This document shows, piece by piece, positions 2,301 to 11,600 of a stretch of 64,000 nt of DNA. The notes beneath the pieces were generated by a model. That model did not search any database, was not told the DNA's origin, and saw only the letters and a program-made list of their open reading frames with translations. The stretch comes from Trichosphaerium sp. ATCC 40318 (Eukaryota > Protista > Tubulinea): the NCBI GenBank assembly GCA_038496445.1, contig JALMLS010000057.1, positions 1 through 64,000 of the forward strand, written 5' to 3'. Each line of letters opens with the position of its first letter. The first letter of the stretch is position 1. The position numbers were made by a program, and so were the translations under genes.

Positions 2301-3785
2301 ATGGGCGGCGTAATTGGTGTTTGTGGACCAACGAATGTAAGGACGCCAGAATCGAAGGCAATAGACGCTCAGCTAAAGAAAGACAACAAGCTACATAATA
2401 CTACTAGTAGGGTTCTAGTACTGGGCGCTGCAGGCTCTGGAAAGTCTACAATTATAAAGCAAGTTGTTTCTATGCACGGCGGTTTCTCACAATCAGATGT
2501 GGGGACATACAAGGATATAATACGTACCAATATTGTTGCGGGGTTCAAACGATTACTGGCAGAAGCAAAAAAGATGGAGTTAAAAGTAGTTCATAAACGA
2601 AAGGAAGCTATGGTAGCAGTTCTTGATGCAAAATTGTATGGTACGCATAATTATTCCGCTTTGGTTTTCAAAAGGCGTTTTGATCATAGATTGGGTGTTT
2701 ATGATATATGGCTTGCTCCGCTATTATACCGCTCGCTGTAGATACACATCGCACAGCGAAGATCTTTTTTGATCGCTCTACAAGTTTTGTTTAATTGGTT
2801 TTTCGCAAATCGAATTGAAACAAGTTTAAATTGTTTGTGATTGATTTAAGAGCGTAGGTGTTCTGTAGTTTTAATGTTTTATTGTAGGCGGTTTGACAGA
2901 AACAGATATTCGCTCGTGCAAAGCATTGTGGGAGGATCCAGTTATAAATAGAGTATTTCAAGCTTGTAGAGCTCAGAGCTTAGAAACTCAGAACTTACAG
3001 TACTTTTTGGACACCGTTATCGATAAAATGCTTTCTGACTATGCTGCATGGACACCAAATGATGAAGATATTGTGAGAGCGCGTCAAAGAACAAGTGGTA
3101 TCAATACTACCGGGTTTAAACATATTGGTCGGTATTGGTTAATGGTTGATGTTGGAGGTCAGAAAAACGAGCGTAGAAAGTGGATTCACGCGTACGTTGT
3201 TTCTTTTGACGGATAATTTTTTTGAACTTTCTTTCGAGAGTCACCCAAACCCTGATCCTTACGCAGTAGTGGGTTAAAATGGCGTATAGCATATTGTTTT
3301 AATCAACCTTTTTTGCGTTAATCGCTTGTTTTGGAATGCTGTCTAAAAACTCTTTTCTCAGGTTCGAAAATACGCATACGATCATGTTTACAACCGCTAC
3401 AAACGAATGGAATATCCCTTGTGATGAAGTTGCCGGAAATACAAAAATGGCGACTTCAATTCAGATTTGGGACGAAAACATCAACTCGCACTATCTTCAA
3501 GACGCTGTTGTAGTACTATTCTTAAATAAGATAGATCTATTGGAACAAACACTTAAAAAAGGGAAATTCAAAGAGACCTATCCAGACTTTGAAGGCGAGC
3601 AGACTATGAAGACTGTGCTTGAGTACATAAAAAACAAATATCTTGAACTTGTATTGCCTGCAAGAGGAGAAAAGCGGGAAGTTATTGTTCATAATGTAAG
3701 CGCTATCAACAAGTCACAGATTATCAGTGTGTTGCATGAAGTACTATACGCTGTACTTAATTCTTGTGGTGGACTTTTATTGTAG
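2301..3785 (+). CDS. Heterotrimeric G-protein alpha subunit (divergent), 3 exons
   Basis: MG myristoylation start with Cys8; P-loop GAAGSGKST; switch I RARQRTSGI; DVGGQ..ERRKW; FLNKID; C-terminal GGLLL. Introns at about 2641-2888 and 3192-3361. Confidence 0.9.
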
Positions 3786-4407: not shown

Positions 4408-5043
4408 TTATACTATGAATAGCTCACCGCCCTGAGTCCACTTCTTGAACACTCCTCTAGGTTTTCCATTGATAAAATTTGACACTCCAAGTAATTGTCC
4501 ATTTTTATACCACTCCTTCTTCTCTCCGTGTATCTCGCCATTAATATATTGACACTGCTCCCATAATTGACCATTAGCGTGCCACATTGTGTAGTCTCCT
4601 TCAAGCTCGCCATTAGAGTATTGACATTGCTTCTGCAATTTACCATTGCTATGCCACAGCTGATACTCTCCGTGTAGTTTATTGTTTTTGTAACTACACT
4701 TGATACTCAGTTTACCGTTTAAGAACCATCCCTTTTTCTCTCCTTCTTTCTTGCCATTGACAAGTTGATACTGCTCAAGCAATTTACCATTAGTAAACCA
4801 CTTCTTGCAGTCACCTTCAAGCGAACCATGTACAAAAGTATATTGTGTTTTTTCAAATATCAAAAATGCTTCTTCATATTTCATCCATTTCCCGTGCTTA
4901 TTTAATTCACTATCAAACCTTGTAGTTGTTGCCGTTTGTTTAGATAAAATAGGCCATTTTTTGTACACTTCAAAGTCTAAGCGTATAATTTCAAACTGTA
5001 GCTCTAATGGAAGCAACAATAAAGTGTAGCGAGCTTGTTCCAT
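4408..5043 (-). CDS. Intronless F-box-like plus MORN-variant (YwqK-like) repeat protein
   Basis: N-terminal LLLLPLELQFEII F-box-like motif, then about five 24-aa repeats of the form GxxxxWxxNGxLxxxxxYxNGxxxG. Confidence 0.85.
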   Translation of the reverse strand: MEQARYTLLLLPLELQFEIIRLDFEVYKKWPILSKQTATTTRFDSELNKHGKWMKYEEAFLIFEKTQYTFVHGSLEGDCKKWFTNGKLLEQYQLVNGKKEGEKKGWFLNGKLSIKCSYKNNKLHGEYQLWHSNGKLQKQCQYSNGELEGDYTMWHANGQLWEQCQYINGEIHGEKKEWYKNGQLLGVSNFINGKPRGVFKKWTQGGELFIV

Positions 5044-5337
5044 GTCACTTCCCTTGTGTACCTGATTGTTTTGAAGAAACTTGAAGACTTTTCGAAAAAA
5101 AAGAGTTTTTCCTTGATTAAGGCACTTCTCATGCTGAAAGGCTCAACAAGACGTTATGGTAGAGGCACGTTAATGCGTGGTAGCTCGAATAGATACAGCT
5201 TTTTTCTGACAAAGCTTCATGTGTGACAGATGGAGGTTAAAGCGCTTGGCAAGAGCGTTCAGAACTTGGCAAGAAAACAGGTCATTTAGAGACGTTTGAA
5301 TCATCTGATGTTTTATTAAATCATGATCACAATTGAT

Positions 5338-8300
5338 TTAATTTTGCTGTTCGGCGTCTTTCTTCTGTGCAACCATGAGATCAGTAACGAATTGGTTTGC
5401 AACACCAATTGTTTCATCAATATGCTGTTCAGTTACTGGTACACCAGCAGTGAATGCAAGAGATTGTGCTAGCCTGATTGTAGTACGGATTTGACGTCCG
5501 TTAATCTCATATTTGGCAAGGCGTTTAATGTCAAGTCCTTTAATGCTTGCTGTTTCCAATAGATTACCCCAAATCTTTTCACGTGCAGTTTCATCGAGGT
5601 TCTCGTATTTGAGGGCGACTGAAGAGTAAATCAGGGACCGAAAAAACAAAAGAGAAAGAAGCAAAGAAAAATAGCTTTTAAAGAACAAAAAAGAGAGCGT
5701 ACCTGAAATACGTGAGTGGAAGGCTTCATCGAATACTTTGACACGATTGGTTGTCAAGAAAAGTACACCTTGATGATATTCAAGCAAACGCAAGAAGATA
5801 CCAACCTATAACAAGTAAGACATACGAAAAAAACGAGAAAAAAAAACAAGAAGAAAAAACAAGATTGTTGGCTGTGGATCTTTTTTCCTTTCTTCGAAAC
5901 TTTACTTACCATAGCATTACGCATGATAGCATTCTCAGAACGCTTCTCAAGGAAGATATCTGCCTCATCTATAAGGACGACAGCGTTCCAGATACTAGCC
6001 AATTCAAGAATCTGACGTAATTTCTCTTCGAGTTCCTTGGTGTTTGTACCAAGTTCACCAACACTAACAGAATACAATGGCCTATGCAATAACTCTGCAA
6101 TTGCCTCTGCAGTGAGGGTTTTACCTACACCAGGAGAACCATGGAGCAAGAAAATACAACCACCACCTTTTCCAGAGATGATATCGGCAAACGACTAAAC
6201 ACAGATTTAGTGATTTGTAATGCAAGTTGGCGATATTTTTTGAACAAAAAAAAGGAAACTCTTTGTATTCTGGACGCATGTGCAATCTAACAAAATAAAG
6301 CGTTTGAGTTGCTGTTATGCACTCGTACTGCTTGCTTCATGACGAAAAAAGCAAAATGAATACAGCACCCTACGTTCCCTGGTCCTCACGGACCCAAGTA
6401 CTGGCAGGGCCATACCATGCTTATCTTCGCGGTTCGGAAAGAGACACGGAGTTTTCATGGTTGTATGGCCGTATCCAATCGTAAAGGAAACATTTTTGAA
6501 AGTGGTTTGGTCAAAAAAGTGCAAATAACCGAAAAATCAAGTTGTGACCACAAAAGCAACAAAAACCCAAAAAAAAAAGAGGTTGCATAAGCGTATGCAC
6601 TCTCCCGAGAGACATGAAGATTATGTGCGAAATGGTTCATGGGTACCTCGTGTGCGTTCTCTACTAGACTCTTGATCAATTGTTTCTTTTTTGGTGGGAA
6701 GACAAGCTTTTCGAAGGCTTTGTCGTCGTATTTAACAGGAAGCAAGTTCTCAACAACAATTTCACCCCATTTCTTGGCTGAAAAACTAAAACCACCAATG
6801 GTAGGCCAGGTCATGAACAAATGCTCCTCAGGAATGGACTAGAAGAGAAACATTTAGCGAAACAAATGAATGAACGAAAAAGCAAAAAAAATCAAAAAAA
6901 AATAAAAGTTTGTGAAGGAGTACGTACTGCCATTCTAGTACTCGAAGCAGGAGATGTAGAAAATGATCTATAATTTGGATTCATACGCGAAAAACTAACA
7001 CCATCTACCATAACCCTTTGATAAAGTAAGAAACACAGAATAAACTGAGAACAATAATCAGAAAATTTTTTCAGTTTTTACCTTCCGTAAGCTTTTGTTG
7101 AGTTTGTTGTCCACCAACTAAAGGTTATTATGAGCATGTGATATTCCTTTTTTTCTTGCGTACTGTTTCCATTCAATATTGCCTGTGTAGTTCATGTAAT
7201 GTGCGCCTTTAGCGGCTTGCATGAACTTCTTACCACGAGCAATAAGAATTTTTTTTGTTGCCTCATCCAAAGGTCTTACAGGCAGATCCTACAATCATCA
7301 GTTGATAATTTTTTTTCTGATTTTGAAGGAAGTACCTTTAGTGTTTTAACACCTGAGAAGGCAGGGATTGAGTAACTCTCTGATGCTCTGTAGTACGTTC
7401 CACCATTAGATTTAATAACATCGGCAGTGATGTCGAAGGAAGGGAACCAGGATGATCTATTGTATTTGGACGTTTTGATCTTTGCACCAACTGCGTGCTG
7501 TGATACTCCGACTTTTGAGGTAATCTAACCAACTATTAGAGCAGTTTTTCTGAGCGTTTGGTACGTACAGTTGTAGATGGTGCAAAAATACTCCAGAGAC
7601 TGTCGTAGTTGATTTTACCGTCTGTTAACATAGTATTGATCTTCTTACGGATGTCCTCGTACTCGTTCTCCAAAAAGTCGATAAGAGGCTTCAATCGAGC
7701 TCTGTATGTTGCATTCTTTTTGAATTGCTCGAGGTATTGTAGCAGAGCCTCTGCGTTAACTTTCGGGCTAGAACGGCGTAAGAAAACGTATTTTTAGCAA
7801 AGGGAAAATTCAGTGAAGAAAACGAGGTGTACTGCAGCCTAACGCGTACCGTTTCTCGTAAAAGATATCAGAGCTGATGAAATAACGTATGGACTCAATG
7901 AGAACAGTATCATTGAGAACAATCATACATCTAGTATCAACTACAGCTCCTGTGTCTGGATCAATGATCTTTTTACGCTCAACTGAGAATCGTTCGTTGT
8001 CTTTGACGGCCTAAAAAACATCTTGAGTTGTGTTTTTAAGGTAAACATAAACCAAATAATTTTGTTCGGCTCAAAGAGCGTAAAGCAATGTAGTCGTAGT
8101 GGAAAACGTTTGTGAGAATTAAAACCCTTTTAGTGGGCGATTTTAGGCGAAAATGAACGTACGTCACTTTCTTGGTCGATTTCACCGTACGCGTAGAGCT
8201 TTACACCTGGAGAGATACTGTCTCCACAGTTATCTTCAGGTGACATGACTGCGCCTTTCTCAGTGGTGATTCTGTTTATCTTAGCCTTCACTCCGCGTAC

Positions 8301-8532
8301 TTTTTCAAAGCGCTTGCACACCTACAGTGGCGTTAACCGCAGTGTGCGCAAATAATTACTGTACCTCATCCATAACCCATTGTACTGTTTCCTCTGAAGG
8401 TACAGGTACCCAGAAGAGTTTACCAGAGAACGAAACCTGGATACGTATTTTTGGCAAAGGCTCACGCGCTGTACCAGGCAACGAGCTTAATATGGTGTAT
8501 ATTTTCTGAGCGAACTTGGGATCTGTGGCCAT
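5338..8532 (-). CDS. AAA+ ATPase with N-terminal ubiquitin-like domain, multi-exon
   Basis: Spliced product starts MATDPKF. Contains FSFSAKKWGE, DIISGKGGGCIFLLHGSPGVGKTLTAEA (Walker A), VLIDEADIFL (Walker B), FLTTNRV..FDEAFHSRI and a lid segment INGRQIR. Confidence 0.9.
6345..6356 (-). terminator. RNA polymerase III oligo-T terminator of the 5S gene
   Basis: TTTT followed by TTTTTT immediately 3' of the 5S end on the minus strand. Confidence 0.8.
6358..6476 (-). rRNA. 5S: 5S ribosomal RNA gene (119 nt), nested in intron 6195-6646 of the AAA ATPase
   Basis: The minus strand reads GGAUACGGCCAUACAACCAUGAAAACUCCGUGUCUCUUUCCGAACCGCGAAGAUAAGCAUGGUAUGGCCCUGCCAGUACUUGGGUCCGUGAGGACCAGGGAACGUAGGGUGCUGUAUUC. 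Helix I is GGAUACGGC/GCUGUAUUC and helix II is ACCAUG/CAUGGU. Loop C has CCGAAC, loop E has AGUA/GAA, and helix IV is closed by a GUGA tetraloop. Confidence 0.95.
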
Positions 8533-8656
8533 AGTTGAATAACAGACGTTCAATACCAACTTTTCCTTCACAGAACGCTAAAACAGTCTTTTTTTCTGGT
8601 TTTGACTTAAGTTTATTTCTATTTCTTACACGCCAAAAAACGTTATCTTGAGACCT

Positions 8657-11600
8657 CTAATCATAGTCTTCTGGGTCAGCGAGGTAAGCTTGTTTGATCT
8701 TGACGTCCTTCTTGAAGATAATGTTGTACTTTGAACCAGGGCAATCATGTCGCAAGTACAAGCTGTTTGCTACCTATAAAATAGTTAACCAAAGCGAAAG
8801 AAAAAATCTAAAGCAACAACCATACCTTCATAATTAAATTAGCTACAGAGCCAACACAGTCAATCTTCTTTGTGCCACCTCCTTTTTGAGGTACATGTAG
8901 GTAGTAACCTTTCTTATCTTGACGAGTATAAATTCTTTGATGAGTGATAGAATTATCTTTTCTTGTAACCTAATTGTAAACGTGAGTGAAGGTTCTCAAT
9001 ACGAAAAAGAACGAAAAAGAACAAACCTTAGATATTGTGAAAGGCATTCTCTCAGGTTCAGTGGTAGACAAGCGAACCAAAAATGTTCCCTTGCGTTGGT
9101 CTGATAGTCTAGATTCAGAATCTCCTCTGGAGATATCACCATGGAACCACCTAGTAGTTATGAGTAACTAGTATGTGCAAACATGTAACTAGTACTTTTT
9201 GTTGAGTGTATTCTTTGCTTTCTCAACTATCAAAGAGGCCTTGGCATCTACGTTCAAAGGTCCAAACCATTTCAAGAAATACCCAAATTTCTCGATTTCG
9301 CAAACTTCTTCATCGTCCTTCTTTGTGCCTTTAAAAACGAGACGAGTTAGGTTGTTGTCAAAAAAGAAAGGACTCATTTTGCTTACCTAACAGTGCTTGG
9401 AGAGTTTTGTACTCAAGATCAGTTGTAGTGAGTGGACGCATTTTGATGGTGTTACAAAAGGTTTTGATGAATTTGCTGAACTCTACAGCAGTATGTCCAA
9501 ACCAATTGTCTATCCATAGAGTTTGACCATTCTTATCAGATATGGTAACCTGTACGGCACATTTATCGAGTTTTTGGATAATCTCTGTGAATGAAGGTCT
9601 CATAGCTTGATCTTCAGCCCAACACACTTCCATAAGTTCTTGTAGTGGAACTGGAATACTATCATCGAGAGGAGGACGCTCCTAAGCAAAATTGAGTAAA
9701 ATATTCAACATTCTCAATTTTCTTACTTGTTTATCACAAACCGCGGAAACAAACGTGTTGTATGAGTCCATGTCCTCAAAAGGCTCATTTCTGGTAATCA
9801 TTTCCCACAAAACAATACCATAAGAGTAGATATCTACTTTTTCGCTCAAGGCTTTACCCTGAAGTACTTCTGGACTCATCCAGAGTGGCTTGAATGGTAT
9901 TTTAGAAATGCTATGAATGTAATAAATTTTTTACGTACAGTGCCAGGCGCTACGCCATCATCCTTCATGCTCTGAGATCGTTTGACAGCGGAAAGACCAA
10001 AATCGCAAATCTTAACATTCCAGCTATCGTCAACAAGCAAACTAAAAAATCATAAGGATAATGGAAAATATAAAGGACAGTTTAGATAGTACTTTGTAGG
10101 CTTCAAATCACGGTGAATCTACAGGTTTGTAAGTATTTTTCTTTACTATTAATAGCTTAGTACGTACAATTGGTGGTTTAGACAAATGAAGCCAATTCAT
10201 ACCTGTAAACGTTGTTACACAATTGTTTTCAATAAAGCAAATAGGCTTACCTTGAGCTACATCCTTTGCCATTTTGATAATCTGCAATAGACTGATGTCT
10301 ACGTCTTTGTTGTGTATAAGCTCATGCAAATTACCTTTAGACAACAATTCTGTGATGATAGCCAAATTTCCTGGCTCAGTACAGCATCCCATGTAGAGCA
10401 CAATGTTAGGATGACGCAAATGTGTCATAATCTCAACTTCTTTTTTGAACTCTTCAAGTAGATCCTCTTCCAAGTCTTGTTGGAGTAACTGCTTAATAGC
10501 GACTTGTTTACCGCGACATTTTCCATTAAATACCTTTATTGTAAATGTTAGTGTATGACAAAAGAAGAAAAAACTAAATTTTATTTCTACCTTTCCGAAA
10601 CAACCACTTCCGATTTTACTGATGATTTTAATTTCGTGAGGCAAGATTTCAGGAGTCTGGAACTCTCCACTAGCTTCTGAGTTACCAAGTGTTCCAACAA
10701 GACCAACGCGGGATGATGCCTACGTAAGATAAGACAGTGAGAAATTTTTCTTTGATTTACTAAATGCTTACCCTAGTGTCTTTTTTCTTTCCACCTTTCT
10801 TCTTCTTTCCTTTTGCAGGTTTGCCACCCTTCAAAGTAGCCATCTGCTTCTTAATTTCTAGGATATCTTCAGTTTTCAATTTCGTCAAAAAGAATCCGTA
10901 CCATCCAGAACGTTAGTTGTCAAACTTGACTTGTTAATGTCAAATTTAGTTAAATGTTTTTGACGGTCTTCCTCAGGTGTTCCAGCGGCATCATATGCTT
11001 CGCGTAATCCTTGCATAGCTGCTTTGATCTCTGATCGACGTTTATTAGCCATTTCAACAAATTCCTGATGAAAACATTAGACGTTATACTGCTGGTTACA
11101 ATACGCACTCTTTCTTTATTTTCCAAAGCTTTTATGAGATCCAAGGTGTAGCCCAAAGATCCTGCCGTGTAGTTTTCAAGCTTTGCCTCTGGTGTTTCAC
11201 CGAGTCGTTGCATAAGCATCTTGATTCTGTCAACGAGACCAGCGATGTGCGTTTCCCTAAGCATAAAATGAGATAAGAACAAAGGAATTAAGAATTTAGA
11301 CGTACCGTCTTTGTTTTGCTGCTGAAAGCTTTTTAATATTTTGTTGCAATGTAGATATATGATCCTTTGCAGGCGTAGTGCTATTTGGCATGTAGTCTGT
11401 TTCTGTGACACCCAATTCTTTCTTTGATGTTAAGAAATACAGTAATACGAAAGGCGGTACGCTACAAATGGCGAAAAGGATACACAACACGACTTTACTT
11501 TTTCCGCCAAACTATCGAACATTTTTTGACGCCCAGCAACCTGGCTGTTTAGTTTGTCATAAAACTTGTCGTAAACTGCGGCCAACTCTTTGTCTAGCTC

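What the first reader, a model, noticed from the sequence alone, without database searches (positions are those of the whole stretch)
6195..6646. Intact 5S rRNA (Pol III) gene nested in sense orientation inside a spliceosomal intron
Seen: most introns here are about 40-100 nt, but this AAA ATPase intron is 452 nt and holds a full 119-nt 5S sequence at 6358-6476. All helices pair, helix III shows a compensatory change relative to the usual eukaryotic pattern (UC/GA in place of AC/GU), and an oligo-T terminator follows. Known: 5S genes are usually in tandem arrays, linked to rDNA or other repeats, or dispersed intergenically, and they have internal Pol III promoters. Inference: this lineage may disperse functional 5S genes into introns of protein genes. 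That implies Pol II/Pol III co-occupancy, or processing of 5S from the excised intron as for snoRNAs.
Basis: partly seen in the sequence, partly recalled or inferred. Interest (0 to 1): 0.8.

Follow-up and report, generated by a model that had tools for sequence, protein, structure and literature searches.

The report
5S rRNA gene inside spliced intron
A complete 5S ribosomal RNA gene sits, pointing the same way as its host, in the middle of a spliced intron of an AAA ATPase gene in an unidentified protist, and it most likely works as its own small RNA polymerase III gene.

Summary
Rfam's 5S model matches window 6357-6476 on the minus strand over its full length (93.7 bits, gathering score 38, E 5.6e-19).

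The surrounding 452 nt (6195-6646, minus strand, GT..AG) is a real intron. Transcript contigs from four runs of four studies join 6647 directly to 6194. They also confirm ten further introns of 43-152 nt in the same gene. The host is a 12-exon DUF7025 / AAA / AAA_lid_13 ATPase on the same strand.

The 5S body has no run of four or more T. It is followed at once by T4-GC-T6. In one RNA-derived run, contigs from other 5S loci match this copy with no listed difference in the body. They stay similar from about -42 to +11 and then diverge completely.

This favours a conserved, self-contained Pol III unit (upstream block, internal promoter, terminator) over a pseudogene, a SINE or an intron-processed RNA. 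No transcript ends could be seen, so the mode of expression remains inferred.

The scan had already found the same layout on other DNA of this genome: at least 16 notes on 5S, plus tRNAs and a U4. All are described as sense-oriented and I did not check them. I found no published report of intronic 5S genes.

The parts
6357..6476 (-). 5S rRNA gene, 120 nt, full length
   Evidence: Rfam RF00001 at 93.7 bits, E 5.6e-19, model 1-120/120. It folds at z -3.6 and has no run of T4 or longer inside. Contigs from other 5S loci in run X1 show no listed difference in this body.
6345..6356 (-). Pol III terminator-like T4-GC-T6, directly after the 5S 3' end
   Evidence: Read from the sequence. Three X1 contigs with different downstream flanks stay matched up to 6345/6346, that is through this element. 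TTTT starts at 6.4% of intronic positions in this gene, so one copy alone is weak evidence.
6489..6518 (-). Upstream block, about -13 to -42 from the 5S start, shared with another 5S locus. It contains an A-rich CAAAAAT at -22 to -16. Candidate upstream promoter element.
   Evidence: An X1 contig from another locus matches 6349-6518 with 7 differences. Four are listed, at -2, -4, -6 and -12. Beyond -42 the contig runs on unlike the window. A role as promoter is inferred, not shown.
6195..6646 (-). Host intron 9, 452 nt, GTACCC...TTTAG, phase 0. The 5S lies 170 nt from the 5' splice site and 162 nt from the 3' splice site.
   Evidence: The joint 6194|6647 is present in one contig in each of four runs from four studies. 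GT..AG ends and distances come. Without splicing the reading frame runs into a stop at about 6455 (ORF 6455..6820).
6647..6838 (-). Host exon 9 (64 codons)
   Evidence: Joints 6838|6928 and 6194|6647. The frame is open. No Pfam hit.
5910..6194 (-). Host exon 10 (95 codons), AAA core with the Walker A motif GSPGVGKT
   Evidence: Pfam PF00004 AAA, E 1.7e-15. Joints. Homologues at 74-87% identity are AAA fragments.
5291..8554 (-). Host gene: 12 exons, 11 GT..AG introns, CDS 8532 to 5338 (1986 nt by addition of exon lengths, i.e. 661 codons plus stop). DUF7025 / AAA / AAA_lid_13 type ATPase.
   Evidence: mRNA contigs of 2040-2052 nt cover 5291-8554. Splice-site check. Pfam exon by exon: DUF7025 on exons 4 and 5 (E 0.017 and 5e-4, collinear), AAA on exon 10, AAA_lid_13 on exon 12 (E 2e-4).

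Best explanation
This is a functional, self-contained 5S rRNA gene. It has a type 1 Pol III layout: an internal control region inside the RNA-coding part, a short conserved upstream block, and an oligo-T terminator. It lies co-directionally in the middle of an ordinary spliceosomal intron of a DUF7025-AAA ATPase gene.

Pol III most likely makes the 5S from its own start site and stops at the T4-GC-T6. Pol II reads through the whole unit, and the spliceosome removes it with the intron.

It is one of many dispersed 5S copies kept identical in their body. It sits in an intron because in this compact, intron-rich genome the intergenic spacers are very short, so introns are the main place where about 175 nt of extra DNA is tolerated. 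The shared orientation would then reflect selection against head-on Pol II/Pol III encounters or against antisense effects.

Shown: gene intact, intron spliced, same strand, terminator present, body identical to other loci. Inferred: Pol III transcription of this copy, promoter role of the upstream block, and the reason for the orientation.
For: - The 5S match is full length and high scoring, and helix III keeps its pairing through changes on both sides.
- The intron is spliced precisely in four runs from four studies, and all 11 introns are GT..AG.
- The 5S body has no run of T4 or longer, while the intron flanks have nine such runs in 332 nt. T4-GC-T6 starts at the first base after the 5S.
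- In X1, contigs from other 5S loci match this copy with no listed difference in the 120-nt body. One differs at 4 of the 12 positions just upstream (-2, -4, -6, -12), matches again to -42, and is unrelated beyond -42. Other contigs match through the terminator and are unrelated beyond +11. This is the pattern of a unit under selection or conversion whose limits coincide with promoter and terminator.
- Neighbouring transcripts lie within about 50-250 nt of the host mRNA ends, so intergenic space here is small.
- In C. elegans, 44% of tRNA genes lie in introns and are Pol III units influenced by the host promoter (PMC4999229), so nested Pol III genes are an established kind.
Against: - No RNA ends, 5' triphosphate or Pol III occupancy could be examined, because all runs were assembled contigs.
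- A T4 directly after the gene is expected by chance at about 6% of intronic positions.
- The candidate upstream element lies at -22 to -16, nearer than the roughly -25 to -30 TATA-like boxes of 5S genes known from fungi and plants (own knowledge).
- If the sense orientation reported for all other noted loci (unchecked) holds genome-wide, it is stronger than the 56% seen for C. elegans intronic tRNAs. That would fit dependence on the host transcript at least as well.
- In C. elegans, same-strand intronic tRNAs show lower Pol III occupancy.
Confidence: 0.65

Rival explanations
1. The copy is intact but silent or nearly so. It has a perfect sequence, but its Pol III transcription is suppressed by Pol II passing through it. 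The cell's 5S would then come from other loci. Its identity to other copies would reflect recent duplication or gene conversion rather than use.
For: In C. elegans, intronic tRNA genes have lower Pol III occupancy, lowest on the host's strand. The host gene is expressed in all four runs. No read evidence ties mature 5S to this particular locus.
Against: The flanks beyond -42 and +11 have diverged completely while the body shows no listed difference. That argues against recent duplication and for maintained sequence. If most or all 5S loci of the genome are intronic, as the unchecked notes suggest, some of them must be active.
Confidence: 0.2
2. The 5S is made by Pol II. It is transcribed as part of the host pre-mRNA and trimmed out of the excised intron by exonucleases, as intron-encoded snoRNAs are. 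That would explain why the copies point the same way as their hosts.
For: The 5S is on the same strand as the host and sits centrally in a spliced intron. Unchecked notes describe only sense-oriented 5S, tRNA and U4 genes in introns of this genome. Run X1 holds contigs joining 5S to flanks beyond the terminator, as expected from Pol II read-through RNA, though DNA carry-over would give the same.
Against: A terminator and an upstream block are kept at other loci with unrelated flanks, and neither is needed for a processed RNA. There are no internal T4 runs. The whole intron shows no special fold (z -1.25), and the flanking 13-nt inverted repeat is A/T-rich and unremarkable. 5S demand is far above what an ordinary mRNA host would supply (own knowledge). 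The sense-only picture may be a reporting bias of the first readers.
Confidence: 0.1
3. It is a 5S-derived mobile element, retro-pseudogene or introner-like insertion rather than a working gene.
For: A 9-nt direct repeat, TATGCACTC, lies at 6316-6324 and 6594-6602 on either side of the 5S. The intron is three times longer than any other in the gene.
Against: An exact 9-mer repeat occurs in 43% of shuffles of the region. Similarity to other loci ends at -42 and +11, not at that repeat. The full-length 5S has no LINE-like or tRNA-like tail and no A-tail. Nothing else in the intron matches Rfam. The splice sites are not part of the shared unit.
Confidence: 0.03
4. Assembly artefact: a collapsed 5S repeat wrongly placed inside the intron.
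For: None of the four runs gave a contig that bridges from the unique intron flanks (6195-6344, 6519-6646) into the 5S unit.
Against: The RNA joint skips exactly 452 nt with GT..AG ends, so genomic DNA of that length lies between the exons. The same layout is noted at many other loci. The runs laid were RNA-like, so intron cover was not expected.
Confidence: 0.02

Closest known systems
Intronic tRNA genes of Caenorhabditis elegans (Sagi et al. 2016, PMC4999229)
   Same: Independent Pol III genes lie nested in introns of Pol II genes and are read through and spliced out by the host. The host promoter influences them.
   Different: Those are tRNA genes (type 2 promoter), not 5S. Only 56% are co-oriented with the host, and the intronic share (44%) equals chance. 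Here the nested gene is a 5S, and every case noted so far in this genome is described as sense-oriented (unchecked).
Dispersed single-copy 5S rRNA genes (Neurospora, Schizosaccharomyces pombe, Acanthamoeba). Own knowledge.
   Same: Solitary 5S units are scattered over the genome. Each has an internal promoter, a short upstream element and a T-run, and the bodies are kept alike while the flanks differ.
   Different: As far as I know those copies are described as intergenic. This one lies inside a spliced intron, co-oriented with its host.
5S genes linked to other repeated genes (rDNA units, spliced-leader RNA, U2 snRNA, tRNA arrays)
   Same: They are unusual 5S neighbourhoods catalogued in protists. 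Examples are the SL RNA-5S-U2 repeat of Diplonema (PMC10161547, which cites Drouin and Tsang 2012) and the Entamoeba tRNA arrays that include 5S (PMC2652664, abstract).
   Different: Those are tandem arrays of RNA genes. Here there is no tandem repeat. It is one copy inside a protein-coding gene's intron, and the only Rfam match in 64 kb.
Intron-encoded snoRNAs and mirtrons
   Same: A small structured RNA lies on the sense strand of a host intron.
   Different: Those lack their own promoter and terminator and are cut from the spliced intron. This 5S keeps a terminator and an upstream block shared with other loci.
5S-derived SINEs (SINE3 type). Own knowledge.
   Same: They are 5S-like sequences dispersed in introns.
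   Different: SINEs have a degenerate 5S head fused to an unrelated body and tail. Here the match is a full-length, high-scoring 5S with nothing attached.

Membership tests
5S ribosomal RNA (Rfam RF00001) | Covariance-model score above the curated gathering score, over the full length | tested here: met
   93.7 bits against 38, model 1-120/120, not truncated.
5S ribosomal RNA (Rfam RF00001) | Helices I-V pair, with conserved loop sequences | tested here: met
   One non-standard pair only (A25-A53). Helix III pairs 30-48, 31-47 and 32-46 differ from the consensus on both sides and still pair. Fold z -3.6.
Pol III type 1 gene (5S type) | Oligo-T terminator at the 3' end and no T4 run inside the gene | tested here: met
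   T4-GC-T6 at 6356-6345 and no internal run of T4 or longer. The element is shared with other loci.
Pol III type 1 gene (5S type) | Internal control region (box A, intermediate element, box C) bound by TFIIIA | tested here: inconclusive
   The box A and box C regions (GAAGAUAAGC, AGUACUUGGGU) follow the Rfam consensus. TFIIIA binding cannot be tested here.
Pol III type 1 gene (5S type) | Transcript starts at +1 with a 5' triphosphate; Pol III occupancy | not testable with these tools
   Only assembled contigs were available, so no ends can be seen.
Spliceosomal (U2-type) intron | GT..AG ends and precise removal from mature RNA | tested here: met
   The joint 6194|6647 is present in four runs from four studies. 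The ends read GTACCC...TTTAG. An ACTAAA branch-like motif lies about 12 nt before the AG (by reading).
Intron-processed small RNA (snoRNA-like) | Sense orientation in a spliced host intron | tested here: met
Intron-processed small RNA (snoRNA-like) | No promoter or terminator of its own | tested here: not met
   A terminator and an upstream block are present and shared with other loci. Their function is inferred.
5S-derived SINE or retro-pseudogene | Degenerate or truncated 5S part, foreign tail, A-rich end, target-site duplication | tested here: not met
   The 5S is full length and intact with no tail. The 9-nt flanking repeat is at chance level.
DUF7025-AAA ATPase (host gene) | DUF7025, AAA (PF00004) and AAA_lid_13 domains in that order | tested here: inconclusive
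   AAA is clearly met (E 1.7e-15). DUF7025 (E 5e-4 and 0.017) and AAA_lid_13 (E 2e-4) fall below the Pfam cut-offs when exons are scanned singly, but they are collinear. The joined protein was not searched.

The most novel reading that the evidence does not exclude
In this protist, small-RNA genes (5S, tRNAs, even U4) may be obligately co-oriented inside introns because their expression depends on the host's Pol II transcription. Either 5S rRNA is matured from spliced-out introns, which would make it a Pol II-made 5S, or Pol III can load only on templates opened by host transcription. Either case would couple ribosome and tRNA supply to a set of mRNA genes.
Probability: 0.12. Interest if true: 0.9.

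Novelty: new variant of a known kind. Interest (0 to 1): 0.6.

Why it matters
5S rRNA is the one ribosomal RNA made by Pol III. Its genes are known as tandem arrays, as passengers of other repeats, or as dispersed intergenic copies.

A genome where intact 5S genes sit co-directionally inside spliced introns of ordinary protein genes would add a new arrangement. It would also give a natural system for asking how Pol II and Pol III share one template, and whether a host promoter licenses or throttles a nested 5S gene, as it does for C. elegans tRNAs. A strict sense bias, if it holds genome-wide, would raise the further question of whether host transcription or splicing contributes to 5S production.

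Taken alone, this locus is one well-documented instance. The value lies in the genome-wide pattern, which still needs a proper census.

Tried and rejected
- **Other 5S loci through spurious ORFs.** I searched the 69-aa ORF that runs through the 5S with the word search. There were no candidates.
- **Exact-product look-ups.** Three window ORFs (the MORN gene, and the exon 9 read-through ORF with two starts) are not on record, so no DNA of this genome or of close strains could be fetched.
- **Metagenome scans.** A 30-nt species-specific 5S stretch and a 20-nt degenerate 3' stretch both gave 0 hits.
- **Relatives of the host exon.** The best fragments are only 74-87% identical, and the only top hit with a species label is a nucleariid. 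Two fetched loci (L001, L002) hold no 5S or any other Rfam family. They are too distant to say anything about the orthologous intron.
- **Naming the organism.** The MORN protein has one distant hit at 38% identity. The Protostelium genome paper describes a similar architecture (8-8.5 introns per gene, median 46-50 nt, more intron than intergenic DNA). The window's 38% GC does not settle it, and I make no claim.
- **Literature.** There is no paper with 'intronic 5S', and none combining 5S rDNA with 'located within an intron'. Broader searches gave nothing relevant. The Physarum genome paper does not mention 5S.
- **Mobile element with target-site duplication.** Rejected, because the 9-nt repeat is at chance level.
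- **Special fold of the whole intron.** Rejected, at z -1.25.
- **Joined spliced protein.** Neither built nor searched. Exons were searched singly by reference.

Full report
**What is there**

Rfam's 5S model matches window 6357-6476 on the minus strand over all 120 model positions (93.7 bits, gathering score 38, E 5.6e-19). Only one pair is non-standard (A25-A53). It is the only Rfam match in the 64 kb, even at E up to 0.1. ARAGORN finds no tRNA gene.

The RNA alone folds into the three-armed 5S shape at -45.7 kcal/mol, z -3.6.

Compared with the model consensus, helix III pairs 30-48, 31-47 and 32-46 are changed on both sides and still pair.

**The host gene and the intron**

On the same minus strand lies a 12-exon gene. 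I laid contigs of four public runs from four different studies on window 5200-8700. Each run holds a transcript contig that joins 6647 directly to 6194, skipping exactly 452 nt with CT..AC ends on the plus strand, which is GT..AG on the gene's strand. The same contigs define ten more introns.

All eleven introns begin with GTA and end with AG. Their lengths are 43, 152, 82, 44, 47, 46, 66, 89, 452, 104 and 84 nt. The 5S-bearing intron is therefore three times the next longest.

Adding the exon lengths from the ATG at 8532 to the stop at 5338 gives 1986 nt, a whole number of codons. This is arithmetic only: I did not build or search the joined protein.

Scanned exon by exon, the gene shows three Pfam domains in order:
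- DUF7025 on exons 4 and 5, collinear, E 0.017 and 5e-4;
- AAA (PF00004) on exon 10, E 1.7e-15;
- AAA_lid_13 on exon 12, E 2e-4.

This is the orphan AAA+ ATPase type that Pfam knows mainly from fungi. Without splicing, the frame of exon 9 runs into a stop inside the intron (ORF 6455..6820).

The 5S lies 170 nt from the 5' splice site and 162 nt from the 3' splice site.

**Signs that the 5S is a unit of its own**

- Directly after the last model position come T4, GC and T6 (6356-6345).
- The 120-nt body has no run of four or more T. The intron flanks have nine such runs in 332 nt.
- A T4 at a given intronic position is expected about 6% of the time, so this copy alone proves little.

Run X1 adds more. 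Besides the spliced mRNA, it holds several contigs that match the 5S region and then run on into unrelated sequence. One contig matches 6349-6518 with seven differences. The four listed ones lie at -2, -4, -6 and -12 relative to the 5S start, and none is listed inside the body. Beyond -42 that contig is unlike the window. Three other contigs stay matched down to 6345/6346, the end of the terminator, and then diverge into different sequences.

So other 5S loci of this organism share an identical body, the terminator and a block at about -13 to -42. The bases next to the start and everything outside have drifted apart. That is what selection or conversion on a promoter-to-terminator unit would leave. 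It is not what a recent segmental copy, a SINE or an introner would leave.

One caveat applies. Logan contigs collapse repeats, so 'identical body' means that the dominant 5S sequence in that run equals this copy.

**What could not be seen**

All runs on offer were assembled contigs. No transcript starts, ends, strand or level could be read. No contig bridges from the unique intron flanks into the 5S unit, so the placement rests on the assembly and on the exact 452-nt gap between exons.

Contigs in X1 that carry 5S together with sequence beyond the terminator could come from unspliced Pol II transcripts or from DNA carry-over. They do not decide the question.

**Most likely mechanism**

I take this to be an independent Pol III gene nested in a Pol II gene (confidence 0.65). 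Pol III would start at 6476 and stop at the T-run. Pol II would read through, and the spliceosome would discard the unit with the intron.

Why an intron? Around this gene, neighbouring transcripts or ORFs begin within about 50-250 nt of the mRNA ends. Introns make up 37% of the gene's span. In such a genome introns are the main neutral space.

For comparison, the two published Protostelium genomes have 9-10.5 Mb of introns against 22-26 Mb of coding sequence in 38-40 Mb (PMC5804921). I could not establish that the window comes from such an organism.

The closest documented system is C. elegans (PMC4999229):
- 44% of tRNA genes lie in introns, which is no more than chance;
- 56% are co-oriented with the host;
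- the host promoter affects the nested gene;
- same-strand copies show lower Pol III occupancy.

**Rival explanations**

- **Intact but largely silent copy (0.2).** Suppression by Pol II passage is plausible from the nematode data. It is hard to generalise if most 5S loci are intronic.
- **Maturation from the spliced intron, as for snoRNAs (0.1).** This would neatly explain a strict sense bias. It leaves the conserved terminator, the upstream block and the absence of internal T4 unexplained.
- **Mobile element (0.03).** The 9-nt direct repeat flanking the 5S appears in 43% of shuffles. It also does not coincide with the limits of similarity between loci.
- **Misassembly (0.02).**

**Earlier scan notes**

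The scan had already found this layout on other DNA of the same genome. At least 16 notes describe 5S genes in introns of UPF2, a CTD phosphatase, eIF4G, SMG7, SIN1, ABCE1, NMD3, CAF-1 p60 and others. Two of them were followed up. Further notes describe tRNA genes and a U4 snRNA nested in sense. No note mentions an antisense or intergenic 5S.

First readers would flag sense intronic copies preferentially, and I could not check any of these loci. I treat them as leads only.

**Novelty**

Full-text searches found no paper with 'intronic 5S' and none placing 5S rDNA within an intron. Broader searches returned only arrays, linkage to SL or U2 RNA or to tRNA genes, SINEs and pseudogenes. The library lacks most subscription journals, including Drouin and Tsang 2012 on protist 5S arrangements, so absence there is not proof.

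I rate the locus a new variant of a known kind: Pol III genes nested in introns are known, but not for 5S. The interest (0.6) rests mainly on the genome-wide pattern.

**Dead ends**

Attempts to fetch other 5S loci, the source genome, close relatives or the organism's name all failed.

Noticed in passing
window 5338-8532, minus strand (all 11 introns of the host gene): Nine of the eleven 5' splice sites read GTAC (mostly GTACGT or GTACGC) rather than the usual GTAAGT or GTATGT. This may reflect a lineage-specific 5' splice-site consensus, and possibly a matching change in U1 snRNA.
   Followed up: no
window 4408-5043, minus strand: A 211-aa MORN-repeat ORF (Pfam MORN_2, E 7.8e-21) starts only about 250 nt beyond the host mRNA's 3' end. 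Its only relative in the word search is 38% identical, and the exact product is not on record.
   Followed up: partly
window 6236-6248 and 6506-6518: A 13-nt A/T-rich inverted repeat (92% complementary) brackets the 5S. One arm lies in the upstream block shared with other 5S loci. The whole intron shows no special fold (z -1.25), so it is probably chance.
   Followed up: partly
window 6316-6324 and 6594-6602: An exact 9-nt direct repeat, TATGCACTC, lies on either side of the 5S, 278 nt apart. It looks like a target-site duplication, but 43% of shuffles give such a repeat.
   Followed up: yes
window 5557, 5773, 6012, 6713, 7199-7396: Runs labelled organism C differ from the window at about 1% of exon positions. 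Runs of organisms A and B are essentially identical to it. Several strains or closely related taxa therefore share this spliced gene. Their DNA could show whether the 5S is in the same intron.
   Followed up: no
window 2893-3785 (plus strand) and 9358-10040 (minus strand): ORF translations look like pieces of a G-protein alpha subunit and of a tyrosine-kinase-like protein kinase, both split by short introns (read by eye, not tested).
   Followed up: no
L001 (ENA ERZ25039557 contig_23777), 6001-6501: A 166-aa AAA fragment 72% identical to host exon 10 lies on a 102-kb metagenome contig. Its neighbours carry bacterial-looking families (ACR_tran, DDE_3 transposase, HMUDK_hel). That is an odd context for this eukaryote-type AAA core.
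   Followed up: no
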